From assembly GCA_965644495.1 (NCBI GenBank), contig CBFFSA010000008.1:434001-498000 (forward strand): a stretch of 64,000 bases of DNA, in the 5' to 3' direction. Origin of the DNA: Perkinsela sp. CCAP 1560/9. Lineage: Eukaryota > Protista > Euglenozoa: Kinetoplastea. Shown piece after piece: positions 18,852 to 58,200 of the stretch (within the stretch, counting starts at the first letter, position 1; every line of letters begins with the position of its first letter). Made by a program: the position numbers and the translations under genes. The notes under the pieces are model-generated. The model ran no database searches, was not told where the DNA came from, and saw only the letters and a list, made by a program, of their open reading frames with translations.

Positions 18852-20204
18852 CTAATACTCGTCCATGTCATCCCCTTCCATATCCGCCGAGTCCGCCCCA
18901 ACCTCCTCATAATCCCGCTCCAACGCCGCAAGATCCTCCCGGGCCTCACTAAACTCCCCTTCCTCCATCCCCTCACTCACATACCAGTGCACAAACGCTC
19001 GTTTCGCATACATCAAATCAAACTTATGATCAATCCGCGCAAACACCTCCGCGATCGCGGTTGTGTTCGCAATCATACACACCGCCCGCTGCACACGCGC
19101 CAAATCCCCCCCGGGCACCACCGTCGGGGGCTGGTAGTTAATCCCACACTTAAACCCCGTGGGACACCAGTCCACAAACTGGATCGTTCGTTTGGTCTTG
19201 ATCGTGGCCACCGCCGCGTTCACGTCCTTCGGGACCACATCCCCGCGGTACATCAGACAGGCCGCCATGTACTTCCCGTGGCGCGGGTCGCACTTCGCCA
19301 TCATACTCGCGGGCTCGAACACGCTGTTGGTGATCTCATGTACACTTAACTGCTCGTGGTAGGCCTTCGCGGCACTCACCACGGGGGCGTAACTCGATAG
19401 CACGAAATGGATCCGGGGGTAGGGGACCAGGTTGGTCTGGAACTCGGTGACATCGACGTTAAGGGCGCCATCGAAGCGTAGGGAGGCGGTAAGGGAGGAG
19501 ATCACTTGGGCGACTAAACGGTTAACATTGGTGTAGTTCGGTCGGTCAATGTCGAGGTTGCGTCGGGCAATGTCGTAGATGGCCTCGTTGTCGAGCATAA
19601 CGGCGACGTCGGTGTGCTCGAGGAGGGAGTGGGTGGAGAGGACACTGTTGTAGGGCTCCACGACGGCGGTGGAGACTTGGGGGGAGGGGTAGATGGTGAA
19701 ACCCATTTTGCTTTTCTTGCCGTAGTCCACGGAGAGACGCTCGAGGAGGAGGGCGCCGAGACCGGAACCGGTGCCCCCACCGACGGCGTGGAACACGAGG
19801 AAGCCTTGGAGACCGGTGCAGTTGTCGGCGAGTTTGCGGATGCGGTCGAGGCAGAGGTCGACGATTTCTTTGCCGATGGTGTAGTGGCCACGGGCGTAGT
19901 TGTTCGCGGCGTCTTCCTTGCCGGAGAGGAGCTGCTCGGGGTGGAACAGTTCGCGGTAGGGACCGGAGCGGATCTCATCGACCACAGTGGGCTCAAGGTC
20001 CACGAACAAGGCTCGGGGAACGTGACGACCGGCGCCGGTTTCAGCAAAGAAGGTGTTGAAGGCGTCGTCCTCAACGACGGCGCCAGATTCTTGGGGCATG
20101 GTGCCATCGGGGTTGATGCCGTGCTCCAGGCAGTAGAGTTCCCAGCAGGCATTTCCGGTCTGGACACCGGCTTGGCCGAGATGGATGGAGATCACTTCAC
20201 GCAT
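18852..20204 (-). CDS. TUBA: Alpha-tubulin
   Basis: [15 protein letters not shown] and C-terminal DEY; 450 aa. Confidence 0.99.
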
Positions 20205-20574
20205 TGAAAAAAGGGTTTGAGAAAAAGGAGGAAAGAGAAGATATATAGGAAAGTTAGATAGCGGTTAGGATGTAATGATAAAGGCATACTATAACAATTA
20301 TCGATCCGTACATAGCCTTAGTTGTATTCCGACGGATTGCAAAACCCTACGAACGTCCCAGATACCGATCTTAATGATATCGTTTCTCTACTGAAGACCA
20401 CCTTAAGACGTTCATATAGTTTCTTTTGAGGTTCCAGAGTTCAATTAGAAAGCAATAACTCTTAAACAACGGCCGATGCCCATGATCTTCAACACTTGTA
20501 CCTCTCTCAAATTAGCAAAAAAAAGTTCAAAATAGCAACAAAAAATTGAAGTTTTCGGTCTTGTGTTGTATCAT

Positions 20575-22503
20575 TTAAAGATCTTCCATATCATCGCTCT
20601 CCTGATAGACACGCTGTACGATTGGATTCGTAACACCCTGTACGCTTTCAAGTTTTTCCTCGTACTCATCCTTGTCGGCGTCAGGGTTTTCATCAAGCCA
20701 TTCAATGCCGTCGTTCACGGCGTCCATGATGGTTTTCTTCTCATCATTGCTTAGCTTTTTCGCAAGCTTGTCTTCGTCCTTCACTTGGTTTTTCAGGTTG
20801 TAAAGAACGCCTTCCAGTTTGTTGCGCGCCTCAATGCGTTCGCGAACCTGCTTATCTTGGTCGCCAAATTCTTCCGCCTCGCGGACCATGCGCTCAATTT
20901 CTTCCTGACTAAGGCGGCCTTTGTCGTTCGTAATGGTGATTTTTTCCTCCCGATTCGTGGACTTGTCCATGGCGCTCACTTGCATAATACCATTCTCATC
21001 GACGTCAAAGGTAACCTCGATCTGGGGAACTCCTCGCGGGGCAGGTGGGATGTCACTAAGGTCGAATTTGCCCAATTGACGGTTATCTTTCGTCATCGCG
21101 CGTTCACCCTCGTAGACGACGATTGAAACTGTCTCCTGGTTATCTGCGGCTGTGCTAAACACTTGACTCTTTTTCGCGGGGATAGGCGTATTACGTTCGA
21201 CAAGCTTGGTCATCACACCTCCAACGGTTTCAATGCCCAGAGATAACGGTATGACGTCCACAAGCAGGACTTTGTTCTCGACGTCGCTCTCACCACAGAG
21301 AACGGCACCTTGCACCGCGGCACCATACGCCACAGCCTCATCGGGATTGATGCCACTGTTGAGTTCCTTGCCATTGAAGAAGTCCTTCAATAACTGCTGA
21401 ACTTTCGGGATACGAGTGGATCCCCCAACCAGAACGATGTCCTCAATATCGGTTTTCTTCAATTTGGCGTCAGATAATACTGCTTCCACAGGCTTTAGAG
21501 TTCCTTTGAAAAGATCCATGTTGAGCTCTTCAAATTTGGCTCGCGTGAGTTTTTCAGAAAAGTCGTACCCTTCGGTCAGTCCGTCCACTTCAAGTTGAGC
21601 CTCCGGTTGAGAGGACAATTGTCGCTTCGCTGCTTCACACGCCTTACGTAGCCGCGCTAGGGCCTTCTGATCTTTGCTGATATCCGTGCTACGCTTCTTT
21701 TTGATCATGTCTACGAAGTACTTCATCAGGCGGTTGTCAAAGTCTTCACCTCCTAAATGGGTATCCCCATTCGTAGCAACGACCTCAAAGAAACCGTCAT
21801 CGATTGTAAGAAGCGAGACATCAAATGTTCCACCGCCTAAGTCGAACACAAGAATGTTACGTTCGCCTTTCTTGTTCAAACCGTAGGCAATGGCCGCAGC
21901 CGTGGGCTCGTTGATGATACGGGCCACATTGAGGCCAGCAATAGTACCCGCATCCTTAGTGGACTGGCGTTGGGCATCGTTGAAGTAAGCAGGAACAGTG
22001 ACCACAGCATTTCGCACAGGTTGTCCCAAATACCCTTCCGCGATTTCCTTCATCTTGGTTAAGATCATGGCGCTAATTTCCTCTGGGGTAAATGCTTTTT
22101 TCTCGCCTTTGTAGGAAACTTGTACGCGTGGCTCACTGTGCTGAGAGACAATTTCAAAGGATAGCAGTTTTTTGTCGTACTGAACGGTCTTGTCCGCGTA
22201 CTTACGCCCGATAAGCCGCTTAATGGTGTAGACTGTGTTCTCGGGATTCTGTGGTAATTGATTTTTAGCGCCATCCCCGATCAACCGTTCACTTTCAGTA
22301 AAGCCGACCACAGAGGGTGTGATTCGATTTCCCATCTCATTTGGAATAATCTGGACCTCACCGTTTTTCCACACACCGACAACGGAATAGGTTGTTCCGA
22401 GATCGATGCCCACCACAGGACACTCGAGCTTTTTGCTGTCGCCGTCGCGCTGTGTTGTAAACCCAATGCCCAGTAACAGGGTGTAGAAAAGGGCAGTCCA
22501 CAT
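20575..22503 (-). CDS. BiP: BiP/GRP78, ER Hsp70
   Basis: Signal peptide MWTALFY..., [17 protein letters not shown] and DLGGGTFD; ER-retention signal MEDL (kinetoplastid MDDL-like). Confidence 0.97.
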
Positions 22504-29274: not shown

Positions 29275-31398
29275 TTAAAGACTAAGTGGTCGTAATTCAT
29301 GAGTCCTATTACGAGAAAACACCACACTGGAGACAAACACTCCAATTGCAATGGACAATGCGACGGTCATGACAGAAATAGCGAACGGTCCCCCAGTTTC
29401 TGCCCCTACGATAGACATTGTGGCTCCTCGAACTCCGAGACCCCCGGGCACTAAAAGCAAAATACCGTTCAATACGGGGATAATGCTTGGGCGCTTCTTG
29501 TAGATGGCGTACAGATTGCCGAGGGTCGCAATGACAAACGCCGAACAGGTTGTTGCAATCTCAGGTGAGCAACGCATTTCGCATAACATATGAACTGCGA
29601 ATCCTACGGTAGAAACCACAATCTGAATCGGCAATTGTTTAAATGAGCTATTCAAAAGAATGCCGAAACACAGTGCAAGTATCGGAAAAAGTGCCAAAGC
29701 CACAAGAGGGAGGTCTACGGAGACCACGACATGAGGATGTATATGAAGATTGGCAGTCTCCGCCCAAGCGAGTTGTGATCCGATCGTTATTCCAATGGCA
29801 TACAGGATTACCTTGAACATAGCATAAACCATGCGTGTTGTACCCGTTACTATTTGTCCCTGTGAAAGTTCCATGACTGATGTGGTCAGAGATAGACCAG
29901 GAAGAAGCCACACCATACTTCCAAGCACACTGGGATAAAAGGCAACTTTGTCTGTCACATAGACTTGGATCAAGCGGACGGCCGCGGCACAAATAATTGT
30001 GCTAAAAAATCCCCCAAGCTGATTAAGTTTTGGTGTAATTTTAGCCTCGATACGTTGGTCCATGATTCCAACGAACAACCCGAGACCTGAAGCAAATACT
30101 GCATCCTCCCAACTTCCACCGAACAAAGCGAGTGTGCTTACCCCTCCTGCAAATATGAAGGCCAACAGCGTGACCCACAAAGCCCAAGGGTCATTTTTCA
30201 TCATAATGCGGTCGAGCTCTTGAATACCTTCCTGAAGTCCCTCGCCCACGTACGTCCCCTCCGCACAATTTCGCGCAATGTCATCAATTTTCTCTAGCTT
30301 CGCAAGGTTGTATCCCCCGGTGGTATCGACAAACATGGTTTCATTCGCCCCATGGGTGCCAAACGTAACCAAAACATGGTTGGGCATGGTCTTAAACGTG
30401 GACGGAAGACCCAGCCCCTCGGAGGCCAGTCGCAGACTCTCATCCACGTGGTGGGCGGGACACCCGTAGAGCTGGTACAGCTGCGCCATTCGAATCAGGA
30501 AGTCCTCTTTTCGGACAATCTCGACGGCATCGTTCATGGTGATCGGGCGGTGCATTGCGGCGACCAGGGCGCGGGGGCTTAAGCTGGGGGGGTAGGACTC
30601 GAGGTAACCCCCGGGGTGCTGTTGTTGCATCGCACTCATGCGTTGGGCCTCTCCCAGGTCGAGTTGAAGAGAGGGGAGGGACATGCGGTCGTGTGGCATG
30701 GTATCGGCGCGGTTTCGAGGGGTGGGAGGCTCGTAGGAGTGGGGCATCGGCGAGGACATGGGAGAGGCCATAGCGATCTCTGGTTTTTCCTCGGACTGGC
30801 AAGGGGAGGGCGTCGCGGGTAAGGATTCAGAACTTCGTAGTCCGCTGGTCTCAGGGGTGGAGGAGGGTAGAGGGGGGCTAGTGGGGTCCGTGCTACATGC
30901 GGGCTGGAGGAGAGAGGTCGGTCCGTGTTCATCTGGGGTGTCAGGGAGACTTTCCATAGTTGGCGTGTGTGGAGGACTTCGAATGTAGCTGTGCCCTGCT
31001 GCGTGCAAATGGTTGGCATAGGGTGAAGCGACCGGAGGAGAGTCCGCCTCGTGCCTGCCGTCGAGCATTCGAAGAGAATTGGGTGAGGCCATGGAGTTTG
31101 GCTGTGCATAGAAATTTGAGAAACTGCCTTGGCGTCCAGGGGATTGTGGCATGGCGTAACTGGAGGTGCCCATGACGGGCCTCGTCTGTAAGAGTTCGAA
31201 AGGTGCGGCTGGTGATTGGCCTTTAAGAAGGCTCAACGATGGACTTTTGCGCTTTTTAGAGGAAGTGGACTTATTGGTTTTCGAAGACCCGTTTTTCTCT
31301 ACGGGGAGATCAGCGACACTAGGGGACGGGCTAATGCCAAATGAAGCGACCTCAGACTGCGAAGAAATCTTCTTTTTTGAAGATGCAAGAGTCATCAA
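29275..31398 (-). CDS. ThrE/Prm10-family membrane protein
   Basis: YGCPAHH, NLAKLE, FGGSWED, LLPGL and LLLVPGGLG; about 10 TM helices after a disordered N-terminus. Confidence 0.85.
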   Translation of the reverse strand: MMTLASSKKKISSQSEVASFGISPSPSVADLPVEKNGSSKTNKSTSSKKRKSPSLSLLKGQSPAAPFELLQTRPVMGTSSYAMPQSPGRQGSFSNFYAQPNSMASPNSLRMLDGRHEADSPPVASPYANHLHAAGHSYIRSPPHTPTMESLPDTPDEHGPTSLLQPACSTDPTSPPLPSSTPETSGLRSSESLPATPSPCQSEEKPEIAMASPMSSPMPHSYEPPTPRNRADTMPHDRMSLPSLQLDLGEAQRMSAMQQQHPGGYLESYPPSLSPRALVAAMHRPITMNDAVEIVRKEDFLIRMAQLYQLYGCPAHHVDESLRLASEGLGLPSTFKTMPNHVLVTFGTHGANETMFVDTTGGYNLAKLEKIDDIARNCAEGTYVGEGLQEGIQELDRIMMKNDPWALWVTLLAFIFAGGVSTLALFGGSWEDAVFASGLGLFVGIMDQRIEAKITPKLNQLGGFFSTIICAAAVRLIQVYVTDKVAFYPSVLGSMVWLLPGLSLTTSVMELSQGQIVTGTTRMVYAMFKVILYAIGITIGSQLAWAETANLHIHPHVVVSVDLPLVALALFPILALCFGILLNSSFKQLPIQIVVSTVGFAVHMLCEMRCSPEIATTCSAFVIATLGNLYAIYKKRPSIIPVLNGILLLVPGGLGVRGATMSIVGAETGGPFAISVMTVALSIAIGVFVSSVVFSRNRTHELRPLSL

Positions 31399-32954: not shown

Positions 32955-33349
32955 GAACCTATTGATCCAAATATTTCACAGTTCTATTGCTTTTTAACCA
33001 GATTAAAACTGGCATACATTTTTTAAAAATATTTCAGAAATACATGTATGCAATGTATGTCATGCTAGAGGTACATGCTTTATACATTCAACTCTGTACA
33101 ATGCAACTTCTAGTACACTGAGATAGAGTACAATACTTTATGCATGGTATAGTATTGAACTTTCCTAACCGAAGTTGTATGTGACGTGTCGTACAAAGAG
33201 ATGCATGTACACTTGCTTGTATTCCGTAGACTAGAAAACAGAACCTCAGAAAAACGTCTATCTATTGCAGAGTTCAACAAATAAACATCTATCTATCACT
33301 GAGCGCCTGACACTTCCTGTATCACAATTTGCTAGGAACCAGATCACAT

Positions 33350-34672
33350 CTACCTATTAATATTCGTTAGGAAGGAAATCTGTATTTTTGCACGCTCCTC
33401 CAAGAAACCATGATACAAATCAAGATACCCTTCATAATGCTCCGAAAGAAGAGCCCCCGACCACCCATACAAACCATCCCCTCCTTCCTGCGCTCTTCTC
33501 CTTCCACCCTCCCCACTCCCCCCCATCCCCGTCTCCGCCTCCTCCCTTGCACTACTCGGCAGCGACCAAAACGCGTTCTCCTCCACAAACCCCGAACCCA
33601 CCCCACCCCTTCCCCCCTCCCTCCCCACCTCCCTCTCTAGAAACCCTTTCCCTCCCCCGCTCCTCCGCACCCTTCCCTGGGACTCCGCACGTCCTCCCCG
33701 TGAACCCCCCTCCCCCTCCCCCTGTTCCCCCACCCCTCCCGTTCCCCCACGGCGCCTACGGGAGCACACCGTGGGGTCGTGGTACCGCGGGGGGTGACGA
33801 CCACCACCACGGCCAACACGACGGTTCCCCGGGGTCGCACTCGCGTCCCGGTCCCGCATGGAGTCCCCGAGCGGGGGGCGGGGCTCGGGGGAGCCGCACG
33901 GTCCCCGGACACTGTAGGTGTGGCGACCGGGGGGGAGGGGGGGATGCGACCCGACGAGTCCCGTACGACTCCCGGTACTCCGGGCGTTTGAAAGGGGTGG
34001 GGTCGGGTCGAGGGGTCCGGGGGGAGGGGGACTGCCGGGTTTGAGGTCCGACGGGCGGGGGTAGGTGAAACGGGAACGAGGTCCCGGGAAGGTACGGGTG
34101 AGGGGGTCGGGGAGGGGAGGGGAGGGGTGGGGGTAGGGGTAGGGGTAGAGGAGGGGGGAGATGGAGCGTGGGGGGAGGCTGGGGTGTCGGGGAAAAGGGG
34201 GGGAGGGGGTATGTGTAGGGGAGGGGAAAGGGGGGGAGGAGAGGGGGTTGGGTGTGGGTAGGGTGTGGTGGTGGTGTCGTCTTGTGGGGTCAGGGGAAGG
34301 GGTTTGAAGGAGTAGAGTATCGAGTTTGTGCATCATGGTGGTAAATTTGTTTTCAAGAGAGTCAAGGCGCTGATTTAAGGTAACGGTCTGGGGTCCTTGA
34401 CCACGGACACTACTCGCCTCGGCCCCATTCCGCGCGCTGAGGTGCGTGTCTGTGGTGTTCCGCGTGTGGACTTGATTCAGAGGAATGTGCGAAGCAACCA
34501 AAGGCTTTTGCTCACTCAGCACGAGAGAAGCACTCTTTGTGTCTAATATTTCTTCTCTGGCTACATCAGAATGTACAACAGTTCGCATTGATACATTGCG
34601 CGTATGTTGAGGGAAAGCTTCCCGCAAAGTTCTTAGATTACGTTCTTTTACAGATGACGCATCGTCAGACAT
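33350..34672 (-). CDS. Hypothetical low-complexity protein (Pro-rich, then Gly/Glu/Arg-rich)
   Basis: 440 aa ATG ORF; coiled segment LNQRLDSLENKF; composition follows the local skew island. Confidence 0.55.
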   Translation of the reverse strand: MSDDASSVKERNLRTLREAFPQHTRNVSMRTVVHSDVAREEILDTKSASLVLSEQKPLVASHIPLNQVHTRNTTDTHLSARNGAEASSVRGQGPQTVTLNQRLDSLENKFTTMMHKLDTLLLQTPSPDPTRRHHHHTLPTPNPLSSPPFPSPTHTPSPPFPRHPSLPPRSISPLLYPYPYPHPSPPLPDPLTRTFPGPRSRFTYPRPSDLKPGSPPPPGPLDPTPPLSNARSTGSRTGLVGSHPPLPPGRHTYSVRGPCGSPEPRPPLGDSMRDRDASATPGNRRVGRGGGRHPPRYHDPTVCSRRRRGGTGGVGEQGEGEGGSRGGRAESQGRVRRSGGGKGFLEREVGREGGRGGVGSGFVEENAFWSLPSSAREEAETGMGGSGEGGRRRAQEGGDGLYGWSGALLSEHYEGYLDLYHGFLEERAKIQISFLTNINR

Positions 34673-35078: not shown

Positions 35079-35668
35079 TACCGCTCTACCCTCGATTAGT
35101 GAAAAAAAAGTGAACAAAAACGGTGAAAATATGAAGAGAAACACAGTAATATAATAGAAGAAAAAAATATAAAAGCGGGCCCCGGTGGTCCAAAACTAAA
35201 AAAAAAATTGAAAAAAACGGGGGTCTAGGGGGGGGTCCATGAGGGGGGGGCATACGTCGCTATTTTTTTTTGGCATTTTTTGTTTTCCAAAATCGAGCGC
35301 AGGGAAGTGGTAGAGTAGGCCGCGGCGATGACTTTCCACCCCCCCCCCACCTGGGGGTACCCCCCCTGGTACGCGCAGGAGGGATCCGACAAGGTGAAAA
35401 TTTCCGAAATTTTTGGGATGACAAAAAAAAAATTGACCCAAAGAAAAGAAAAATATTTTTTTTCCAAAATCGACTCCTAAAACGTATTTTAAGAGTTTTG
35501 GACCTCAGCTACCATTTTACAAAGTTTTTTTCCACAGATTCGCCTCCCACCACTACTGGCAAGGCATCAAAGACGGCCCAAATTTGGATTAAGATTTCAC
35601 AATTTTTGGCGGAAGATCGCGCTTTTTCACCCAAAAAACTAGATTATTCATGATCTTTTGGCGATTTT

Positions 35669-35781
35669 TCTTTTTTAGGCTCTTCGTTAAACGCGGTGGT
35701 AGTTTTCAACGTGAAGCGCGCATCATGGATGACTTCTAAGTTGAAAACAACTACCGCGTTTAACGAAGAGACTAAAAAAGA
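35669..35781. mobile_element. Short hairpin/MITE-like element, copy 2
   Basis: Same arms as 9054-9160 (GGCTCTTCGTTAAACGCGG...CCGCGTTTAACGAAGAGAC). Confidence 0.8.
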
Positions 35782-35893
35782 TATTCATACTTGACCGAAC
35801 ATAAAATATACGCGGTGGAAGAGATGAACTAGTAGAACCATACTTCGACCGAAAGTGGCAAAAGTGTAAATTACCCCCCCACCACCTGAAAAC

Positions 35894-36667
35894 TTACAAC
35901 ATGACATTGGCCGGTGTGACATGCGGTATGGTTCCGTTAATTTTATTGTGTCTGAGATCCAAACTCCACAATGGTGAAGGCAATTCGCGCACATCAACAA
36001 CGCCTTCGAATTTGTTGTTGTGTAATGAAAGAATTGCGAGGTTCTTGGGCAGGTGCTTCAGTATCAGCTCGCCAGAAAACTGATTACGATGTGCTTGAAA
36101 TTCTAAGAGTTCTGGCGGGAGACACTGCAACGTGAGTACCCCACAAAGTAGATTATTGCTCACGTTAATCGCTTTCAAAAGGGGTGGAAATGCGTCAGCG
36201 TCTATACTTCCTGTAAATTCGTTAGCAGAAACGCTGAAAAGTGACAATGTTTGGGGTAGATTCCCACAGCTAATATTTCCTTGAAAGGAATTGCTTCTAC
36301 AATAAAATGTAGACAGGACACGCGGAAGCACCTCCCACTCCACGATTCCACTAAAACGATTGCCCTGTATGTCAATGACCTCCACCGTATCCGGCAGATA
36401 TTGCCACAAGAGAGGTCCAGCAAAACCGATAAGAATCCATTGAATAGATTGTACTAATCTATGCTTCGTACATAAAACTCCTTTCCAAGAACAAGCGTCG
36501 ATATCTGTATTCCAGGACTCGTGCGGGTTTTCAATTTTATGTGTAAATCTTGCCAAATCGTACTCAGTAGGAAGCGTTGCACCTCGCAACCGTCCCACTC
36601 TGCTACTGTTTTCCATTATAGGGGGCAGACCTTTCAAAGTAAAAATCCAGACTATCAAAAGCCACAT
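35894..36667 (-). CDS. Leucine-rich repeat protein
   Basis: ACSWKGVLC cap and LPxxLxxLxxxxNxFxG repeats. Confidence 0.9.
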   Translation of the reverse strand: MWLLIVWIFTLKGLPPIMENSSRVGRLRGATLPTEYDLARFTHKIENPHESWNTDIDACSWKGVLCTKHRLVQSIQWILIGFAGPLLWQYLPDTVEVIDIQGNRFSGIVEWEVLPRVLSTFYCRSNSFQGNISCGNLPQTLSLFSVSANEFTGSIDADAFPPLLKAINVSNNLLCGVLTLQCLPPELLEFQAHRNQFSGELILKHLPKNLAILSLHNNKFEGVVDVRELPSPLWSLDLRHNKINGTIPHVTPANVML

Positions 36668-36810: not shown

Positions 36811-38541
36811 TCACAAAGGACAAGAACAGCCCATCATGCAATGACGAATGATGGCGCGCATGTACGCGTCCATGAAATGGTCTAGAGGTGTGATCTCCGA
36901 TACCTTTTGTGACAATGATTGGAAAACTTCTTCCGAATCCGATGTAGTATGATACGGTATACCGGAGATCGAAAGCAAATGAAATGTGCCAAAAAATTCA
37001 AAAGACCTCATCAAAGGAGCCATCTCAGGGATCAATAACTCTTGCGGCGTGGCACTTGAGACTCGTCGACAGCGTGCTGGAGAGCTTCTCGTACTCCCAG
37101 CGGGACTGACATCGTTTGAGTCATTTAGGACAGAGTCAGAAATTAGTGAATATGTCACGCGCTTGTGTTTTTCCAGATCACTCCAAAACCACGTTGACAC
37201 TTTGCGGCGAGCTTCCTCCGCGGCTCCTACAATAGTTTCTCGAGCATTGTCGATCGCATTTAACGTGTCCCGAATCAGTTGCCTAGGAGTGTTGTGTCCC
37301 ATGGCGATTCGTGGAAATAAGTCCCCACGGTAGACAAAATGGTGAAAATAGCATGACGCGTTCATAGACTTCACATAGTCACGGAGCCTGTGGTTTCCGA
37401 TCATGGGTGTTCCTGCAGTGACACAGTACAGTTTACCGTAGAGCTCATCAAAATGACGGGAGAGAAGGTGAACCGTCGCCAAGGCAGCGATTGCACCGCC
37501 CAGTGAGTGTCCACAGTAAACTACGGTAAAACCGTCGCGTGCCCAATCGAGTACTTCGGGAATCACCACACGATTGGCTTCGGCCAGGAATCCGCTGTGC
37601 ACTTTGTACCGAGGACGCAGACTTATGCTGTGACAAACCCCAGGGGTGTCTCCTACACAAGGCCTTGCCATACGAACATGCGCCCGACTGATTTGCATAT
37701 CTGTCAGACCCGTGCGTGCGTCATGGGTTCCTGGAAACGCAACATAACGAATACGACCCGGTGACTCAAACACAGAGTAACGTTGACTCGTAGAAATCAC
37801 CCGGAGTTTTGTGGAGGCGGGAAGAGCATGGTGAAGGAGGCATAGCTCTGGGTAGCGCGGGTACTCGTAGCACATGCCGGCACAGATGAGAGATAACGTA
37901 AGAATGCGGTTTACCTTCGGATCTGGAACCAAATTTGCGGTATACAACGTCGGTGGGGGAGTGCGCAGCCGGACATGTGTGTCATTTGAGGTCCCTGTAA
38001 TCGACCTTGAAAGCTTCTTCATTTTCCACCAGGGCTCATTTTCTTCGTACGGTACATCTACGACCCGGTCATCATAGGGTGTGAGTGGGATCGTCGGGAG
38101 GAGGCACTCAGGACATGTCGCAGAGTACGAAAGCGAGGGACAAAGTTCTCGTTGCACACAGCATTTTCCTGCGTCACATACTTCCAACAGAAGCAATAAT
38201 CCACTTTGAGGTGTATCACACAGAGCATGATCGTACATGAGCAGACGCGAGAGACTTTCTCGCATTGCACACCGATCGCAGACATGGGCCGGACTGGCAG
38301 TGATGCCAAGAGAGGTGTACCTAGCGCGAGAGCGACAAGCCGCACACACGGCTTTCATACATCGGGCACAGTGATTTCTTTGTCGATAACTTCGTGTGCA
38401 GACGCTGCAAGATAAGCAAGTACAGCGTCCGACGGTATTGAGACACGTATTGCATTGCATTCTCGTCATGTCGCGCTGCGGAGAACGGGAACCAAGTGAA
38501 AGAAGATCCATTTTCCGTACAGCATAAAATAAATTTCCCAT
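36811..38541 (-). CDS. FYVE-like zinc finger plus class 3 lipase
   Basis: RNHCARCMKAVCAAC...VCDRC; VHSGF and CGHSLGGA; C-terminal DH. Confidence 0.85.
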   Translation of the reverse strand: MGNLFYAVRKMDLLSLGSRSPQRDMTRMQCNTCLNTVGRCTCLSCSVCTRSYRQRNHCARCMKAVCAACRSRARYTSLGITASPAHVCDRCAMRESLSRLLMYDHALCDTPQSGLLLLLEVCDAGKCCVQRELCPSLSYSATCPECLLPTIPLTPYDDRVVDVPYEENEPWWKMKKLSRSITGTSNDTHVRLRTPPPTLYTANLVPDPKVNRILTLSLICAGMCYEYPRYPELCLLHHALPASTKLRVISTSQRYSVFESPGRIRYVAFPGTHDARTGLTDMQISRAHVRMARPCVGDTPGVCHSISLRPRYKVHSGFLAEANRVVIPEVLDWARDGFTVVYCGHSLGGAIAALATVHLLSRHFDELYGKLYCVTAGTPMIGNHRLRDYVKSMNASCYFHHFVYRGDLFPRIAMGHNTPRQLIRDTLNAIDNARETIVGAAEEARRKVSTWFWSDLEKHKRVTYSLISDSVLNDSNDVSPAGSTRSSPARCRRVSSATPQELLIPEMAPLMRSFEFFGTFHLLSISGIPYHTTSDSEEVFQSLSQKVSEITPLDHFMDAYMRAIIRHCMMGCSCPL

Positions 38542-38870
38542 AAAACCAACTTTACGAACGGTAATGTTTCAAAGTCAAACCTTGGCCCCTACAGGGTAAC
38601 ATTCTAAAATGAAATCATTAGAAATAAAGAGACGCATTCCAGCGAATCTTAGCTTATCTACCACTGTTGTGATCCGGACGAAAAAAAATATTTCAGAATC
38701 TCAACGGTAAGGTAATTCTTAAAGATATTACCATCTCCGTTGTGATCGACAATATATCTGTAACTGCAGAAATTCAAAGCTCATTACTGTGTCTACCTTT
38801 TGTAGCATCATACGAATGCGAAAAAAAGAAGTACTCTTTCGAAGAACATCTTGCAAAATACATCTCCCCA

Positions 38871-39845
38871 CTATCGTCGTTTCTTCAGAAAATCAAAAAT
38901 CCTCTCCCACACCCGTCGCGCGACCAGCAACGTCTTATGCTGCGTCGTCGGCGAATCCCGTGGAATCCGCATAATCGCCACATTCCACATCGTCACCGCA
39001 GCCTCCACCTTTTCCTCCTCAAAACACAAATGAAACCCCAGCACACGGCTGAGGATCTCCGCCACACTCAGCTCCCCCCCTTCCCCCTCCTTGGGGAACC
39101 ACCCCGTAAACTGCCACGTCCTCCCCGAGACGAAGCACGCGGCCACGCTCCCCCAGTCCCCCACCTCCCGGGGGTGGTCCACCACGACGAACGGCCCGGG
39201 GCCCGGGACCCCCATCACGTGGGCGGGGCTCACCGCGACCGCAGGGGGGCGGGCCGCGAACCCCGGGGTCGAGGGGGGGGCGTAGTGCCCGCGGGAGAGG
39301 AAGCCGTGGATGTTGGTGAGATTCAGCGCGGTGGTGGTGGAGGGGGGGACGAGCAGTGTGATGGGGGGAGGGGAGGGGAGGGGCCGGGGGGGGTGGGGGA
39401 GCGCTCGTGAAGAAGTCAGTTGTAAAGAAACCGGTTGTGAAGAAGTAGGCTGTGAAGAAGAGGTCCTGGAGAGCGTAAGCTTATCTCCGGTGGTGGAAGC
39501 GGGAGTGGTGAGAATAGATATTGTGTTTTTTCCATGGGTGAGGGTTTCTTGTGGGGCTTCTTGTGTTGGTGAGTGGGTTGTGGGCTTGGTGTGTAGGCTT
39601 TGTTCAAGACGTTCCATAGCGTCGTCGACGAGTTGAAGGATTTGTTTTGCGGGTCCAAGGTGGGCCTCGGTGGCGTTTTCGGGGGAGTGTGTCATGGCAT
39701 AGAGCGGGTCTTTTACGAAGAAGGGTTTTTCGGATGCGGCCAAGCGGTCCGTTGCGGCTTGTTTTAAGGACGGCGTCAAGGTTTGACGACCGAGCACAAC
39801 CTCGCGCCATTCCTGATAAAACGCATCGTCTGTAGAAGGTATCAT
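38871..39845 (-). CDS. CDC73: CDC73/parafibromin-like Paf1 complex subunit
   Basis: PITLLVP...LNLTNIHGFL, ACFVSGRTWQFTGW and GFHL. Confidence 0.85.
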   Translation of the reverse strand: MIPSTDDAFYQEWREVVLGRQTLTPSLKQAATDRLAASEKPFFVKDPLYAMTHSPENATEAHLGPAKQILQLVDDAMERLEQSLHTKPTTHSPTQEAPQETLTHGKNTISILTTPASTTGDKLTLSRTSSSQPTSSQPVSLQLTSSRALPHPPRPLPSPPPITLLVPPSTTTALNLTNIHGFLSRGHYAPPSTPGFAARPPAVAVSPAHVMGVPGPGPFVVVDHPREVGDWGSVAACFVSGRTWQFTGWFPKEGEGGELSVAEILSRVLGFHLCFEEEKVEAAVTMWNVAIMRIPRDSPTTQHKTLLVARRVWERIFDFLKKRR

Positions 39846-45667: not shown

Positions 45668-46263
45668 GGCCCCCCCCAGAACAGGGGTTGTGGACTTAGG
45701 GCCCGATGAAAAGCTGTGGGGTGTCGGGATGGGCCCCCCATTACAATGGGATTTTGGATACGGGCCCGCTCTGAGGCTGCCAGCCTCGGCGCAATCCTCG
45801 CTGGCATCCCGCTTGGCCCCCCCAGAACAGGGGTTGTGGACTTAGGGCCCGATGAAAAGCTGTTGGGTGTCGGGGTGGGCCCCCCATTACAATGGGATTT
45901 TGGATACGGGCCCGCTCTGAGGCTGCCAGCCTCGGCGCAATCCTCGCTGGCATCCGGCATGGCCCCCCCCAGAACAAGGGTTGTGGACTTAGGGCCCGAT
46001 GAAAAGCTGTTGGGTGTCGGGGTGGGCCCCCCATTACAATGGGATTTTGGATACGGGCCCGCTCTGAGGCTGCGAGCCTCGGCGCAATCCTCGCTGGCAT
46101 CCGGCATGGCCCCCCCAGAACAGGGGTTGTGGACTTAGGGCCCGATGAAAAGCTGTGGGGTGTCGGGTTGGGCCCCCCATTACAATGGGATTTTGGATAC
46201 GGGCCCGCTCTGAGGCTGCCAGCCTCGGCGCAATCCTCGCTGGCATCCCGCTTGGCCCCCCCC
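45585..46263. repeat. 147-bp tandem repeat (about 4.6 copies) encoding a 49-aa unit
   Basis: C-runs start at 45670, 45817, 45963, 46110 and 46256 (spacing 147/146/147/146); unit DASEDCAEAGSLRAGPYPKSHCNGGP... Confidence 0.95.
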
Positions 46264-46421
46264 TGATGCGGGGGTGTGGGAATGGGGTCTGTAATGTGGG
46301 GGTCGGGTAGTGGGGTAGGGGTGTCCTCGGTTTGTGTGCTCGTCTGTCCCGTTACGTTCACGGGGTTACTGTCCGCGGGGCCGGAGGATTTGGGCGTTTT
46401 ATTCTTCCGTTTTGCGCGGCG

Positions 46422-46490
46422 TGGTCCCGGGTTGGCTTCGATGCACCCTCTACGGAGGTTACACCGGACTAACTCGGCCGACCACCCCGA
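46422..46490 (-). other. 2A-like (StopGo) peptide motif
   Basis: WSAELVRCNLRRGCIEANPGP against the consensus GD(V/I)ExNPGP, with D replaced by C. Confidence 0.65.
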
Positions 46491-46822
46491 GTCAGCTATC
46501 AGTCCCTCCGTGGGCGTGAAGCTCCAGCAAGCCGTTCCGCCCTCCGACGCGAACGGGGTCCAGGCTCCTGCAAAGCACTGGGCTATACCAAGGGCGTGGC
46601 ATAGGAAAAAGGGGATATGTTCGCCTGGGAGATCGGACGGCGTCTCTATGCTTGCTCCTGCTCCCGATCCGTCGAAGACTTTGACGTGGGGACCGTGGGA
46701 GGGGCCGTGGTTTGGAGTGAGCAGAGAGGCCCATATGCACTCAGCCTCTCCATTAGACAAATGAATTGTCTCCACCTTGTGGGCTACTTCCCGTTCTTTT
46801 CCCAAAAGCAATTTGCTCCAAT

Positions 46823-47122
46823 TCACCGATAAGGTATTGTATTCCGAAGGAAATGAGTGTCTTCCTCGTGTTCTTTGCGCGCCTTGCGTCGGTTTAGGTT
46901 CTGCGGATCATTAAAAAAGACTCGCACCATACCCTCAAGTAGGTCGTCAGAAAGATGTCTCTTCTTGTTTTCTATGTGCAACATGTGACCAAATTCGCGC
47001 TCCGTGTGTGTTTCGGAAAAGTGAATCCGGTTTATTGCTTGTCTAAACGTATTTTTGAGAAACAGAACTTCGCCAATAGTTCTCCACAACTTGTCGCTGT
47101 GTATCATCAACCACGCGATCAA
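46823..47122 (-). pseudogene. hAT transposase C-terminal dimerisation domain fragment
   Basis: SETHTEREFGHMLHIENKKRHLSDDLLEGMVRV fits SxxxxERxFS...KR..L....LE. Confidence 0.7.
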
Positions 47123-47370: not shown

Positions 47371-47955
47371 TTAAAGACGTTCTATTTTTGTCCCACTTAT
47401 GATTAAACAGTGTATACCACGCGGTAAGTCATTTGTCACTAACGTACCAGTAAGCTTCGGATTCTCCGACAAACTTAACTGCCGAAGCCCTCGTGGAAGT
47501 TTCGCAAATAATATAGGACCTGTAAAATCATTTCGCATTAAGTGAAGAAACATTAGATTCGGGGGGCAATCGTGTAAATCCAACGAACCACTAAACCTAT
47601 TGAATTGCAATCTCAAAGCACACAAATGACGCGGCAACTCATCGAAAAACACGTTCCCGAATAGTTGATTTGAAGACAAATCGACATCTTCTATAGTTTG
47701 AGGAAGTTGTGACCAGTGTAAATATCCTCGTAGCATTCGACCTTCCCATGAAAGGGCAGTAACTGTTCCGTTGATATTACAAGACACACCAGGCCATTGG
47801 CACGCAGGTTCTTGTTTCGGAAAACGCCAATCGGATTCTTCCACGTCCCTCAGGAAAAGAGCAAGTTCGAATTCTGGCGGTCTTCGAGCACTTATACGAG
47901 CTAAACGGGGCCCGTCGGAGGGATCCTCAGAATTCGCAAACCGGAGAGTAAGCAT
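47371..47955 (-). CDS. Leucine-rich repeat protein
   Basis: ACQWPGVSC cap and LPxxLxxLxLxxNxFxG repeats. Confidence 0.9.
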   Translation of the reverse strand: MLTLRFANSEDPSDGPRLARISARRPPEFELALFLRDVEESDWRFPKQEPACQWPGVSCNINGTVTALSWEGRMLRGYLHWSQLPQTIEDVDLSSNQLFGNVFFDELPRHLCALRLQFNRFSGSLDLHDCPPNLMFLHLMRNDFTGPILFAKLPRGLRQLSLSENPKLTGTLVTNDLPRGIHCLIISGTKIERL

Positions 47956-51731: not shown

Positions 51732-51955
51732 TTCGATGTCATGTAATACGGTTCACAGCGCAAAGGTCGTTCATGTATTTCGAAACCTGTAAATAAGGAG
51801 GAATTCGCATGAGGACAAAAAACATTTTTATCTGCATACAGAAATGAAACTGTATTTCTAGGCCGGGTGGTTTGCCAAAATAAATCTATTCGCAACAGGA
51901 CTTAATCAAAAAAAATACTAACCTATATTTAAAGATAATCTCGGGTACCCGCTTC

Positions 51956-52588
51956 CTATTCAAGAAGACAAGTCAAATCCTCATCATTCATATCCACCTC
52001 TTCCCCCTCACCTTGTGGCAACCTCTGAACAACATTCCCATGCCTGTGTCGTTTATGTATCTCCCGTTCCACCCTCTCCTCCACCCTCTCCTCACGACCA
52101 CTCTCCTCACGCCCACTCTCCCCCGTTTCACTTTCCGAGTTTTCGAACCCACCCTCGCGCCGCTCGCCTCCCCCTTCTCCCTCCTCCTCCTCCTCCTCCC
52201 CCTCGCTCCTCCCCCCACTCGAGCGACTCCTCTCACTCCCCGACTCCGCCTCGCGGTCGACGTACCGCTGGGCGTGTCGCGCGGCGCGCTGTCGCGCCTT
52301 CTGCTTTCGCGCCCGGCGCGCGAGCCCGCGCTCGCTGACGTAGCCGGTCGCCTTGTGGTAACGCTGCAGGGTGCGACGGGCGACGTGCTCGAGTCGCCAC
52401 GGGAGCTCTGCCGCGGGGAGGTCCCGGTTGGTGAGCACCGCGCGGAGACCGCGACGGAGCCCGGGGTGGTAGGCGGGGGGGATTTCCTGCATCTGACGGA
52501 GCAGAGCAAAGAGGGTCTCCGGGGGGACGGTGTCCGGGGTGAGGTCGACGGCGATGCGGTCGTTGTAGTGGTTGGGGAAGGGAGGCAT
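51956..52588 (-). CDS. Hypothetical protein with an acidic/Gly-rich tail
   Basis: 210 aa ATG ORF preceded by a polypyrimidine tract on the coding strand. Confidence 0.6.
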   Translation of the reverse strand: MPPFPNHYNDRIAVDLTPDTVPPETLFALLRQMQEIPPAYHPGLRRGLRAVLTNRDLPAAELPWRLEHVARRTLQRYHKATGYVSERGLARRARKQKARQRAARHAQRYVDREAESGSERSRSSGGRSEGEEEEEEGEGGGERREGGFENSESETGESGREESGREERVEERVEREIHKRHRHGNVVQRLPQGEGEEVDMNDEDLTCLLE

Positions 52589-52891
52589 GGGTGAGGGGGG
52601 AGGAAAAGAAAGAAAAAGTTTCTTGGAAAAGACGCTTCTACACTGTAGGTTACCATTGTAAGTTATAACTTTTTTGATCCTTTTTTTCCCTTTTGCAAAA
52701 ATAAACCTCTAGAAGAGCTTCGTCTTGTGTGTGACGGAAGGAGATGTGAAATGCCATGGAAAGACGCGAAAAGAATAACGTGTGAAAAGTAACATGTGAG
52801 CTCCTTACACTGTTCATACATTGTAGTTTTAGGAAGTCGTAGAAGTGTAAAGGAAGAGTAAAAAACGGATAGGGTAAAAGCTCCACACAGA

Positions 52892-53677
52892 TCATGCATT
52901 CTCTGCACTAGGTATGGACAGTCTGCGTGGTTTCTTGGCCTCTTTTGCTTCCGCATCCGCAAGAGTGATTCGTCGTCGTCGAGGGCGGCAGGACAGAGGG
53001 TTGGGTCCCTTTGATTTTCTTTTTTTCCGTGGCTGCACAAATTCTGTGGAAGCGTCGCTGGTCTTCCTTTCCATAAGATTTTGTTGTTTCGCAGACATCG
53101 GTTCTCTACCAATAGTTTTAGGGCTGGACATATCAGATTGCCCCGTAGTCCGTGATTGTCCACTTGCATTCGGGGGTCGAATTCGTAACTCGGCCAGATT
53201 TCGGTCAAAAACAAGGACTGGTACCTGAGGAAACATTCGCGTAATATCGGGTGCGTGCAAGGAAGAAGTACAAATCATGCAGCTCTTTTTTCTGTCCAAA
53301 TATTGAAGGTTCATTCTTATCCAGCGGTCAAGCAAATCAGTGCTGTTTTTTATTTGCTCAATCTTCACCTTTTCTCCAGACTCGTCCATTATGGAAACGT
53401 ATTGAAGCTTTTGACCGAGACGGAGCGCCGCCTGATGACCGCTTTGCTTAAGACTTTCCAATGTCCAAGTATGCGTACATACTGAAAAGAGTGTTGGTTT
53501 GCCCAATGTGGTTAAGAGTCGTGTAACTGCTTCTCTTGGTGTAGTCTGTCGCGAAACGCATTCCTGCAAAAAGTCACTCTCAACCCATACACGATACGGA
53601 GGCCGATGATTGTGACATATTTCGTAGTTAAGAAGCGCCTTTTTATTGTCCTTCCTGCGATGTACGCGTGATTTCAT
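52892..53677 (-). CDS. UTP23: UTP23-like rRNA processing protein
   Basis: N-terminal RPPYRVWVESDF and C-terminal KKRKSKGPNPLSCRPRRRR. Confidence 0.82.
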   Translation of the reverse strand: MKSRVHRRKDNKKALLNYEICHNHRPPYRVWVESDFLQECVSRQTTPREAVTRLLTTLGKPTLFSVCTHTWTLESLKQSGHQAALRLGQKLQYVSIMDESGEKVKIEQIKNSTDLLDRWIRMNLQYLDRKKSCMICTSSLHAPDITRMFPQVPVLVFDRNLAELRIRPPNASGQSRTTGQSDMSSPKTIGREPMSAKQQNLMERKTSDASTEFVQPRKKRKSKGPNPLSCRPRRRRITLADAEAKEAKKPRRLSIPSAENA

Positions 53678-55293: not shown

Positions 55294-55644
55294 TTATCTT
55301 TGGCTACGAAGAATATAGTACAGGAAAAAGAAGACAAAGGCAACAAACATAATTAAAGTTCGCATGGGGTGAAAGTTAGTGTGTCGGTGCATCACAACAT
55401 TGATATGGTGGAGACTTCGTTGAAGCGCTCCACGTGACTTTAGCATCAGTTTATCCATTCCAGATAGAATCGACGTCTGTTCGGAAACTTCTTGTTGTAG
55501 AGATTTGCATGCACCATGTAGTTGGGAGACTTGATTAGACAACGCGCGTAATATGGCCTCATTTTCTTCGAGGACGTATTCGCCCAAGCCTCCACTGGAA
55601 GCCGTAGTTCTTCTCTTGTCGGTGCTTACTGTGGTTGTTGGCAT
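55294..55644 (-). CDS. Bet1-like Qc-SNARE
   Basis: LEENEAILRALSNQVSQL...QEVSEQ SNARE heptads and a C-terminal TM. Confidence 0.8.
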   Translation of the reverse strand: MPTTTVSTDKRRTTASSGGLGEYVLEENEAILRALSNQVSQLHGACKSLQQEVSEQTSILSGMDKLMLKSRGALQRSLHHINVVMHRHTNFHPMRTLIMFVAFVFFFLYYILRSQR

Positions 55645-55938
55645 AATCTCACACTCGCTCTTCTTAGTTTCATTTCTTCTTTGGAAAATGCTAATTTATT
55701 AAAAGCGAATAAAGAGGAGGTTCTTTAACGTAGCGAATTATAGTATTCAGAAATAGGTCTCAGTATAGTAGTAATTTAGAAAATATACGATGAACGGAAA
55801 GCTACAAATAGTATTTTGCTTAATTTTTCTTTGAGAATGCTCAACCACTAAAATTTCAGATTTGCTTCAGTATCAATAAATGCTGATACAACTTTTCACT
55901 TTCTTTCTTGCTACTTGCTCTTGACTTTGTATGTGACC

Positions 55939-56664: not shown

Positions 56665-56874
56665 AACGAACGTAATTTATAGAATATACAAGACTGAAGT
56701 AATAGGTCTGGAAGATACACCCCGTCTCTGTTGTCGAGAAACTATGCGTAAAAACAGTACCAGGTATACCTGATGTACAGTGTAACTGGATATAAATTCT
56801 GCAACTGGTTGTACATGCCCTTACCTTCGAAAAACCCAAAATTTACTTATGAACCCTACATCCCACCCTCTTAT

Positions 56875-58200
56875 CTACTCCAGTAACCGCCACGAGCCCT
56901 CACCCTGGGGTGTGTGCCGCGTGATCCGGGCATTGATCTCATCCACCTCGTACCACGCCTCATTCTCATCCTTCCACGGCTCGTACGGGTTGTCATAGTA
57001 CCCCTCATACATCGGTTTCTCCGCCTCCTCTACGCGGGCCGCCACCTCGTCCTCTACCGTTACCGGAGCGGCGGTCATCAACCCCCGCGCAGGGAGCTGA
57101 TTCCGAATATGCGGCGGCAGCTCGGTGTACTTCGCCAGCAGCACCTCCTGCTGCATCTGCAGCACCGCCCCCTCGGTGAGCACCAGCCGGTCATGCTGCA
57201 AACAATCGTACACATTAAACCGATTCAACGGAACCGGGTTCTTCGGTCCCTTCGGTCCAAGATACTTCAACCGCTGCCGCTGTCGGTTCCAATCCACCGG
57301 CTCCGGGCATTCCACGATCGGGCGCACCGTCTTCACCCGTCCCTGGGCGAAGCTGCCGTAAAAGAACGACCGGTTAAACTCCTTACTCGGGGCGACCCGG
57401 GAGCCCCCGTCGAGGAACAGCACCCCGGCGCCCGTGTGGCGGGTGTCCCACCGCATGCGCCCGCAGAGCGCGCTGAACCCCCGCGGGGTCGGGCGGGGCA
57501 GCGCGAGGCGCTCCACGACCTGGAGCTTCCCCTGGAGCAGCTTGGTGGTGAGCGCCATGGCGTTCGCGATGCGCCACTTGTGGGGGTTCTGCGGGGGCAT
57601 GCGGCGGGTCCAGGGCTTCATCGGGTTCGAGAGCGCCCCCCAGCCGTACTTGGCCCCTTTGCGGGGTCCGGCGCGGATGAGGCCGGTGCCGGTGTTGGGG
57701 TAGGGCTTCTTGTTGCTGAGGTAGAGCTCGCGACAGCCGTGGTCGGATTGGATTTTGAAGTTCTGACAGCGCTGGTCCCAGTAGTTCCAGGCCCAGTGCA
57801 GGTGCTCCGTGTTGGGGTAGCGCCCGAAGAGGTAGGGGTCGAGCTCGGTGGTGTGGCTGATCTCGTTGTCGAGGGTGAAGACGGGGACAATGAGGGGGAC
57901 GCGGATGGTGTTGTGGGTGTAGACGGGGGTGACGGAGCATTTAAAGTGGGGAAGCTCGGGGAGGGGCTCGGTGAAGTAGGGGTGTACACGTTGGGGGGAG
58001 GGGGCATAGGGAGAAATCAGTGGCCAGCGCAGGGAACTCATGACCGCCCCTCGCAGAGGCAGGGGGTGGGCTCCCGGGATCACTTGGTCGGGGTGCTCGA
58101 GTTGAAAGTCGACCCCCGCACGAGGAGCCAGGGATTGTCCCTGGTCCATTTTCTTCATCTTACTAACAAAGCGGTGGGCAACCCAGTTGCGGTGTAACAT
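56875..58200 (-). CDS. Mitochondrial ribosomal protein uL4m, extended form
   Basis: KKPYPNTGTGLIRAG loop and NVYDCLQHDRLVLTEGAV. Confidence 0.8.
   Translation of the reverse strand: MLHRNWVAHRFVSKMKKMDQGQSLAPRAGVDFQLEHPDQVIPGAHPLPLRGAVMSSLRWPLISPYAPSPQRVHPYFTEPLPELPHFKCSVTPVYTHNTIRVPLIVPVFTLDNEISHTTELDPYLFGRYPNTEHLHWAWNYWDQRCQNFKIQSDHGCRELYLSNKKPYPNTGTGLIRAGPRKGAKYGWGALSNPMKPWTRRMPPQNPHKWRIANAMALTTKLLQGKLQVVERLALPRPTPRGFSALCGRMRWDTRHTGAGVLFLDGGSRVAPSKEFNRSFFYGSFAQGRVKTVRPIVECPEPVDWNRQRQRLKYLGPKGPKNPVPLNRFNVYDCLQHDRLVLTEGAVLQMQQEVLLAKYTELPPHIRNQLPARGLMTAAPVTVEDEVAARVEEAEKPMYEGYYDNPYEPWKDENEAWYEVDEINARITRHTPQGEGSWRLLE

What the first reader, a model, noticed from the sequence alone, without database searches (positions are those of the whole stretch)
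18852..58200. Recurrent roughly 1-kb GC islands with a sharp C-to-G skew inversion inside genes
Seen: at about 19.35, 30.55, 33.85, 39.25, 52.35 and 57.5 kb (weaker at about 2.3 kb), the DNA is C/A-rich to the left, CpG-rich in the centre and G/T-rich to the right, fading to background within about 0.5-0.8 kb. In conserved genes the change is synonymous. Alpha-tubulin switches from C-ending codons (ATC TCC ATC CAT CTC GGC) to G/T-ending codons (GAG GGG ATG GAG...GGG GCG), and uL4m does the same. In weakly constrained ORFs it rewrites the protein (Pro-rich, then Gly/Glu/Arg-rich). The pattern is strand-symmetric, so one-way transcription or codon selection does not explain it. Inference: the footprint of positionally fixed bidirectional events every 3-13 kb, such as replication origins (same polarity as a bacterial ori) or double-strand-break hotspots with GC-biased conversion. 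I know of no description of this in kinetoplastids.
Basis: partly seen in the sequence, partly recalled or inferred. Interest (0 to 1): 0.85.

Follow-up and report, generated by a model that had tools for sequence, protein, structure and literature searches.

The report
Strand-polar GC islands inside symbiont genes
In a kinetoplastid symbiont of a marine amoeba, roughly one gene in ten carries a 1.2-kb patch whose freely changeable letters have been pushed to C on the left and G on the right; these look like scars of fixed DNA break-and-copy sites that favour one base on one strand, which would expose how GC-biased gene conversion works.

Summary
Real. All six islands are confirmed at fourfold sites (p 2e-4 to 6e-19); the 2.3-kb site is borderline. 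In 264 kb there are 17 clear islands plus one weak, irregularly spaced, all C-left/G-right, all centred inside coding sequence. The organism is a Perkinsela-type symbiont of Paramoeba atlantica or very near; orthologues in three other Perkinsela lack the islands. Corrections: no CpG excess and no keto skew at fourfold sites. One rule fits: G beats A, T and C equally on the strand running outward from the centre, fading by about 650 nt, equally on both arms. No motif, hairpin, repeat or long-range skew. New clue: two unlinked alpha-tubulin copies differ at 25/62 fourfold sites at the ends but 5/133 in the island core, a gene-conversion signature. Best reading (0.5): fixed break sites repaired by recombination with a strand-aware bias, where the broken strand keeps its C, a case Li et al. 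2019 conjectured. Rival (0.25): origin-focused mutagenesis. The conversion evidence is one gene pair; no reads were available. The scan already noted these islands on other pieces of this genome.

The parts
18852..20284 (.). Island 1, centre about 19,380, inside alpha-tubulin (CDS 18852-20204, - strand). An unlinked paralog on C1 carries the same island, and the two copies are homogenised in the core
30059..31330 (.). Island 2, centre about 30,450-30,500, inside a ThrE-family exporter gene (29275-31398, -); the right arm is stronger than the left
33243..34393 (.). Island 3, centre about 33,870, the strongest in the window, inside a 440-aa ORF with no Pfam match (33350-34672, -): Pro-rich, then Gly/Glu/Arg-rich
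38507..39785 (.). Island 4, centre about 39,220, inside CDC73 (38871-39845, -); absent from three Perkinsela orthologues
51874..53005 (.). Island 5, centre about 52,340, inside the 210-aa ORF 51956-52588 (-). This frame, not 51988-52656, has homologues in three Perkinsela
56817..58282 (.). Island 6, centre about 57,490, inside mitochondrial uL4 (56875-58200, -); fourfold GC 0.92; absent from four relatives' orthologues
1755..2833 (.). Borderline, possibly weak or decayed island in the LOG/lysine-decarboxylase-like gene (1654-2796, -); not significant
   Evidence: LLR 4.8; p 0.013

Best explanation
Each island marks a stable site where both DNA strands break, repeatedly over evolutionary time, and are repaired by homologous recombination (most simply SPO11-type hotspots; recurrent mitotic breaks would do the same). 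Breaks fall within about 250 nt of the centre, and heteroduplex runs outward up to about 600-800 nt on each side. On each side the strand pointing away from the centre is copied from the donor, and the strand pointing inward is the broken chromosome's own 3' overhang. Mismatches normally go to the donor, but a C on the recipient strand is kept. In the population this drives G on the outward strand against A, T and C alike: C-rich left, G-rich right, and GC-rich in the middle where the two sides overlap. It is non-adaptive drive: silent sites shift almost fully and amino acids shift where they can. SHOWN: the one-base, one-strand rule, its shape, mirror symmetry, lineage specificity, and homogenisation of one paralog pair. 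INFERRED: breaks, meiosis, heteroduplex geometry, and the C-restoring repair step. Why centres sit in coding DNA is unexplained.
For: (1) Folded fourfold profile: G:A, G:T and G:C log-odds are about equal (about +2 at 200-300 nt); A:T, T:C and A:C are near 0 beyond 200 nt. A G-only model fits as well as one with free C and T terms (0.9 log-likelihood for 2 parameters) and better than symmetric GC bias, keto bias, both together, or strand-blind mismatch recognition. Equal shifts for one transition and two transversions suit a transmission bias better than one chemical lesion (inference). (2) The bias peaks at 2.6 at 0-100 nt and decays to about 0 by 800-900 nt, like tract coverage; there is no robust skew beyond. 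(3) Unlinked alpha-tubulin copies: 25/62 fourfold differences at the ends versus 5/133 in the core. Local fixation bias, protection or hypermutation alone predict 18-52 (P 2e-4 or smaller). The homogenised zone (nt 318-1260) is shifted 3' as the island centre is (26 versus 5 differences in mirror zones, p 2e-4). (4) Amino-acid changes at sites conserved in three Perkinsela go to C in the 5' half and to G in the 3' half (33:12 versus 22:28, p 0.006). (5) A SPO11-type domain, two full Rad51-family genes and five MutS homologues are present; Perkinsela keeps SPO11, DMC1 and HOP1 (PMC5601477). (6) Li et al. [quoted passage not shown] (7) ~1-kb GC peaks mark stable dog hotspots (PMC4053742).
Against: The conversion evidence is a single pair. 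Homology ends alone lower conversion near gene ends, and the two linked beta-tubulin CDSs are identical with no island. Polarity is not independent support: a break model fits either polarity, depending on which base is kept. All 18 centres lie at least 150 nt inside CDS (P about 4e-6), whereas non-PRDM9 hotspots are usually promoter-like (own knowledge; abstracts). The effect drops sharply in flanking intergenic DNA (G 0.25 versus 0.48-0.52 at matched fourfold sites; background 0.18-0.20). Sex has not been shown in this vertically kept symbiont. Conserved residues are not replaced faster in uL4m than in a non-island gene (0.24 versus 0.26). Centres were placed with a template drawn from the same data, which favours the G-only fit somewhat.
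Confidence: 0.5

Rival explanations
1. Fixed replication origins with origin-focused, strand-biased mutagenesis: error-prone early synthesis, or lesions on the exposed lagging-strand template bypassed by inserting C, make G a sink on the outward strand within about 600 nt. Breaks at the origin could also cause the paralog conversion.
For: Polarity equals bacterial and human origin skew jumps (PMC2817419). Human constitutive origins show ~1-kb, transcription-independent mutagenesis with T>G, C>G and T>C excess, strand bias inverting at the centre, raised GC and G4, linked to breaks (PMC9645720). Arms are symmetric. One site per about 15 kb is a plausible density. The G bias starts about 250 nt before the centre. 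Three Y-family polymerases are present. A faint same-sign tail reaches 4 kb (z up to 2.2).
Against: No robust skew between islands. [quoted passage not shown] Leishmania initiation zones are AT-rich and mildly depleted in CDS (PMC12890776). Hypermutation predicts 43-52 paralog differences in the core; 5 are seen. Gaps of up to 39 kb next to 2-kb spacings.
Confidence: 0.25
2. Internal bidirectional transcription start or R-loop sites: the non-template strand on each side becomes G-rich by mutation or by selection for G-rich promoter DNA.
For: Polarity matches G-rich coding strands at T. brucei start regions (PMC5579346). Chromatin G4s in T. brucei are enriched in CDS and start sites (PMC13316426). 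G4 motifs cluster on the outward strands.
Against: Islands lie inside one unbroken minus-strand gene array, with no strand switch. Sense and antisense arms are equal although the sense arm is heavily transcribed. T is depleted, not enriched. It does not explain paralog homogenisation.
Confidence: 0.08
3. A selected DNA or mRNA structural element (G4/i-motif pair or fold-back) written into coding sequence.
For: G4 motifs are abundant in the arms. Low paralog divergence could reflect constraint. The effect is largely confined to CDS. Two islands fold better than local shuffles (z -3.4 and -2.8).
Against: No arm-to-arm complementarity beyond composition (mean z 0.25; mean MFE z -0.75). The G shift is as large without a neighbouring G. 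No shared motif, no Rfam match, not conserved in relatives.
Confidence: 0.07
4. Codon selection, gene-position gradient, transposon remnant, or chance.
For: Alpha-tubulin is highly expressed, and highly expressed genes here have somewhat raised GC3 (0.54-0.61).
Against: No gradient in 98 other genes. Beta-tubulin, BiP, uL30 and eS19 lack islands, while uL4m and gamma-tubulin have them. Centres fall at 0.25-0.84 of gene length. Islands are single copy, and changes in conserved genes are synonymous.
Confidence: 0.02

Closest known systems
GC-biased gene conversion at stable PRDM9-independent hotspots (dog 'GC peaks', PMC4053742) and the recipient-strand GC-restoring pathway of mouse non-crossovers (Li et al. 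2019, PMC6715734)
   Same: About 1-kb local GC peak, tract-like decay, bias at silent sites that spills into amino acids, lineage-specific positions, signs of conversion.
   Different: Bias is for one base on one strand, so a strong mirror skew appears; centres are inside CDS of a polycistronic array, not at promoter-like CpG islands; far stronger (fourfold GC up to 0.92 on a 0.42 background); no recombination map exists here.
Human constitutive replication origins with focal mutagenesis (Murat et al. 2022, PMC9645720) and CpG-island/origin skew jumps (Polak and Arndt 2009, PMC2817419)
   Same: About 1-kb, transcription-independent footprint, raised GC, skew inverting at the centre, G4-rich.
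   Different: No long-range skew here; no CpG excess; paralogs diverge slower, not faster, in the core; the effect size is much larger.
Trypanosomatid origins (T. brucei stranded SNS-seq, PMC13179062; L. major DNAscent, PMC12890776)
   Same: Same class of organism; strand-specific G4 arrangement around a centre.
   Different: Those are intergenic or AT-rich, with plus-strand G4 upstream; these are intragenic, GC-rich, with plus-strand G4 downstream.
GT-rich RNA polymerase II start regions of T. brucei (PMC5579346)
   Same: G-rich strand pointing away from the centre.
   Different: Those are broad regions rich in G and T at the heads of gene arrays; these are 1.2 kb, T-poor, and inside genes of a one-way array.
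Strand-asymmetric mutagenesis around human meiotic breaks (Hinch et al. 2023, PMC7615360)
   Same: Mirror-symmetric footprint around a break centre.
   Different: That is loss of C and A on resected single-stranded DNA over about 2 kb, a small rate change. By my geometric inference it would remove C from the inward strand, the opposite of what is seen here.

Membership tests
Recombination hotspot with gBGC | Short (about 1 kb) local GC rise at neutral sites with tract-like decay | tested here: met
   Fourfold GC 0.61-0.92 versus 0.42; back to background by 650-900 nt
Recombination hotspot with gBGC | Strand-symmetric weak-to-strong bias (canonical gBGC) | tested here: not met
   The symmetric model fits about 400 log-likelihood units worse than the G-on-outward-strand model
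Recombination hotspot with gBGC | Locally raised gene conversion | tested here: inconclusive
   Strong core homogenisation in one unlinked paralog pair; no second pair found; linked beta-tubulins identical without an island
Recombination hotspot with gBGC | Directional fixation at constrained amino-acid sites | tested here: met
   To-C versus to-G changes 33:12 in 5' halves and 22:28 in 3' halves, p 0.006; the rate of change is not raised
Recombination hotspot with gBGC | Break and strand-exchange machinery encoded | tested here: met
   TP6A_N/SPO11 hit, two full Rad51-family hits, five MutS hits; which gene is DMC1 or MSH4/5 was not determined
Recombination hotspot with gBGC | Mapped breaks, LD decay, or high-frequency derived GC alleles | not testable with these tools
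Recombination hotspot with gBGC | Promoter-like or intergenic location of default hotspots | tested here: not met
   18 of 18 centres lie in the CDS interior
Bidirectional replication origin | GC-skew switch from negative to positive | tested here: met
Bidirectional replication origin | Skew persisting along the replicated arms | tested here: not met
   Right-minus-left skews beyond 750 nt have |z| up to 2.5 over 30 tests, mostly below 1.5
Bidirectional replication origin | Kinetoplastid origin anatomy: intergenic, AT-rich, plus-strand G4 upstream | tested here: not met
Bidirectional replication origin | Raised local substitution rate (human constitutive origins) | tested here: not met
   Paralog core divergence is lowered; one pair only, and conversion could mask a raised rate
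Bidirectional replication origin | Nascent strands and ORC/MCM binding | not testable with these tools
   no data
Kinetoplastid GT-rich transcription start region | G- and T-rich coding strand at the head of a gene array | tested here: not met
   T is depleted; islands lie inside one minus-strand array
Kinetoplastid GT-rich transcription start region | H2A.Z and primary transcripts | not testable with these tools
   no data
CpG island | CpG observed/expected raised over a depleted background | tested here: not met
   About 1.0 inside and outside; no PF00145 methyltransferase hit
Dispersed repeat or structured RNA | Shared sequence, inverted arms or family match | tested here: not met

The most novel reading that the evidence does not exclude
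This lineage has a few hundred to about a thousand stable, intragenic, possibly self-reinforcing recombination hotspots at which gene conversion is biased for one base on one strand (recipient C kept). The hotspot map, break zone and tract length could then be read from a single genome sequence, and GC bias here would be a by-product of a strand-aware repair rule. It would also be sequence evidence of long-running recombination in an obligate eukaryotic endosymbiont.
Probability: 0.4. Interest if true: 0.9.

Novelty: new variant of a known kind. Interest (0 to 1): 0.78.

Why it matters
The molecular cause of GC-biased gene conversion is still open. Mouse data allow a pathway that restores only recipient C or only recipient G (PMC6715734), and such a pathway predicts exactly a mirror skew around stable hotspots. 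This genome shows such a skew at extreme strength, so it makes the idea testable with population sequencing alone. If the origin reading is right instead, it gives a sequence-readable origin map unlike any mapped in trypanosomatids. Either way, a local non-adaptive force is rewriting codons and amino acids of core genes (tubulins, importin alpha, spliceosome, proteasome and mitoribosome subunits), which would bias phylogenies, codon-usage studies and binning of this lineage. I found no description in nine literature searches, which cover only open-licence papers and bioRxiv.

Tried and rejected
Gene-position or expression gradient: none in 98 genes. CpG island: observed/expected about 1. Keto (deamination) skew and symmetric GC bias: poor fits. 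Strand-blind poor repair of C-containing mismatches predicts T and A over C on the outward strand, which is not seen at fourfold sites. Hairpin or quasi-palindrome: no excess. Shared centre motif: none convincing among 5-7-mers. Repeat family: islands are single copy. Rfam: none. Sigma-70 scan: uninformative. Periodicity: spacing CV 0.88. Strict gene-boundedness: arms fade inside long CDSs at about 550-600 nt, and a reduced G-over-C skew continues into intergenic DNA, so islands are attenuated outside CDS rather than set by gene ends. The parametric tract model was degenerate in shape and strength, so I rely on the knot fit. A second island-bearing paralog pair was sought and not found. Gene models are longest-ORF calls.
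Full report
Source. The window is G000:C8:434001-498000 of a 21-Mb, 110-contig assembly. Genes are intronless and lie on the minus strand across the 264 kb that I could read. uL4m is 64% identical to Perkinsela sp. CCAP 1560/4 and branches as sister to three Perkinsela with modest support. A protein labelled Paramoeba atlantica in EukProt (MMETSP0151) matches the C1 alpha-tubulin copy at all 11 sites where the two copies differ. The organism is therefore the Perkinsela-type symbiont of that amoeba, or very near it (inference).

All six islands show a GC peak and a negative-to-positive skew flip, significant at fourfold sites (p 2.5e-4 to 6e-19) against a best chance value near 1e-3 in 77 island-free genes. 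The 2.3-kb site is borderline. Over 264 kb, 15 step scores reach 120 and 17 islands are clear, all C-left/G-right; the opposite-sign peaks are side lobes. An 18th, in Cbf5, is GC-rich with no significant flip. Spacing is irregular, 2.3-39 kb. Islands are discrete: 98 other genes have no gradient. Most host genes are ordinary conserved ones: importin alpha, a proteasome subunit, an SF3B2-like protein, SKIP, CDC73, uL4m, alpha- and gamma-tubulin.

Anatomy. On the strand running 5' to 3' away from the centre, fourfold G reaches 0.54-0.68 within 300 nt (background 0.21), while A, T and C all fall. G:A, G:T and G:C log-odds are about equal, and the other three contrasts are near zero beyond 200 nt. 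A model with one G term fits as well as a free model and better than symmetric GC bias, keto bias, both together, or strand-blind mismatch recognition. The term starts about 250 nt before the centre, peaks at 2.6 and fades by 650-900 nt. The central GC peak is simply the overlap of the two arms. CpG is not enriched beyond GC. The two arms are equal whether the outward strand is sense or antisense. There is no motif, no arm complementarity, no sequence shared between islands and no robust long-range skew. All 18 centres lie inside CDS (P about 4e-6). Arms fade inside long genes; where they cross a gene end, only a weak G-over-C skew continues. This last point is not explained by any model I tested.

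Lineage specificity. uL4m and CDC73 orthologues in three Perkinsela genomes, and uL4m in a further relative, have no island. In 31 kb from each of the three genomes the step score never exceeds 78. The fourfold scan gave maxima of 26 and 19 in two of them, with reverse-polarity maxima of 16-17, as expected from GC-rich genes; weak islands there are not excluded. Amino-acid changes at otherwise conserved sites follow the island polarity (p 0.006), without a higher rate.

The paralog clue. Alpha-tubulin has two unlinked copies that share only the CDS. The C8 copy is missing from the syntenic place in the three relatives. Both copies carry the island at the same codon position, so it travels with the gene. 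They differ at 25 of 62 fourfold sites at the ends, but at 5 of 133 between nt 450 and 1260. Composition does not explain this: models of local fixation bias, protection or hypermutation tuned to the ends predict 18-52 differences. The low-divergence zone, nt 318-1260, is significant by permutation and is shifted toward the 3' end, as is the island centre at about nt 830 (p 2e-4). This is what conversion tracts starting at the island would give. Caveats: it is one pair, homology ends reduce conversion anyway, and the linked beta-tubulin CDSs are identical without an island.

Mechanism (inferred). After a two-ended break, the heteroduplex on each side pairs a donor-copied outward strand with the recipient's inward strand. 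If repair normally favours the donor but keeps a recipient C, then G wins over A, T and C on the outward strand and nothing else is biased, which is the observed rule. Li et al. 2019 proposed a recipient-strand GC-restoring pathway in mouse and noted that it might act on only one of G or C (PMC6715734). They also found the bias lost when mismatches are clustered, which could account for the weak intergenic signal if that DNA is more polymorphic (untested). SPO11-type, Rad51-family and MutS genes are present, and Perkinsela keeps meiotic genes (PMC5601477). The polarity itself does not favour this model, since keeping G would give the mirror image. I give it 0.5.

Rivals. Origin-focused mutagenesis (0.25) has a real precedent in human constitutive origins (PMC9645720) and the right polarity (PMC2817419). 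It conflicts with mapped kinetoplastid origins (PMC13179062; PMC12890776), with the lack of long-range skew, and with the slow paralog divergence. A hybrid, with breaks at origins repaired by conversion, remains open. Internal bidirectional promoters (0.08) fit the G polarity (PMC5579346) but not the T depletion or the arm symmetry. A selected structure (0.07) lacks specific pairing or conservation. Codon or positional effects are refuted. About 0.08 is left for causes not thought of.

Novelty. It works like a biased-conversion hotspot, but it fails the canonical tests of strand symmetry and promoter-like location, and direct tests were not possible, so I do not file it as a known hotspot type. 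I found no description in the searchable literature. The scan has noted the same islands on many other pieces of this genome; those notes are not independent support. One claims that islands are where genome copies differ most, which I could not check and which lowers my confidence.

Limits. Island centres were placed with a template from the same data. Verdict: observation confirmed with corrections; interpretation partly supported; new variant of a known kind; interest 0.78.

Noticed in passing
window 5457-7739: A 2.3-kb element with a 98% identical copy at C8:381577-383859; it holds a broken-looking transposase ORF (5495-6196, -) with a weak integrase-core hit that resembles bacterial IS30 (from memory, not tested).
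   Followed up: partly
window 35079-35785: Dispersed repeat of about 700 bp with at least 40 copies at 80-89% identity across many contigs, with an internal inverted segment near its right end.
   Followed up: no
window about 15450-15745: Short dispersed repeat with at least 40 copies at 85-96% identity.
   Followed up: no
window 42836-46826: Reverse-transcriptase retroelement with 147-bp-spaced internal repeats; GC-rich (about 0.6) but with no skew flip, so not an island. A related 81% piece lies at C8:311387-312668.
   Followed up: no
window 13175-20204: Alpha-tubulin, peroxiredoxin and a pectinacetylesterase-family gene lie between BiP and the LOG-like gene here, but not in three other Perkinsela: a lineage-specific inserted block, or one lost from the others.
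   Followed up: partly
L005:1501-2832 (G000:C2): Gamma-tubulin carries a strong island centred near its 3' end; the two beta-tubulins (L003, L004) have none and are identical over the CDS.
   Followed up: yes
L007:4572-6456 (C8:248572-250456): A 36/72-bp tandem repeat array inside an alpha/beta-hydrolase gene abuts the right arm of an island.
   Followed up: no
window 35894-36667, 47371-47955, 58475-59188: Three dispersed leucine-rich-repeat-like genes, judged by eye from the translations.
   Followed up: no
G000, whole assembly: No PF00145 DNA methyltransferase hit; three Y-family polymerases.
   Followed up: no
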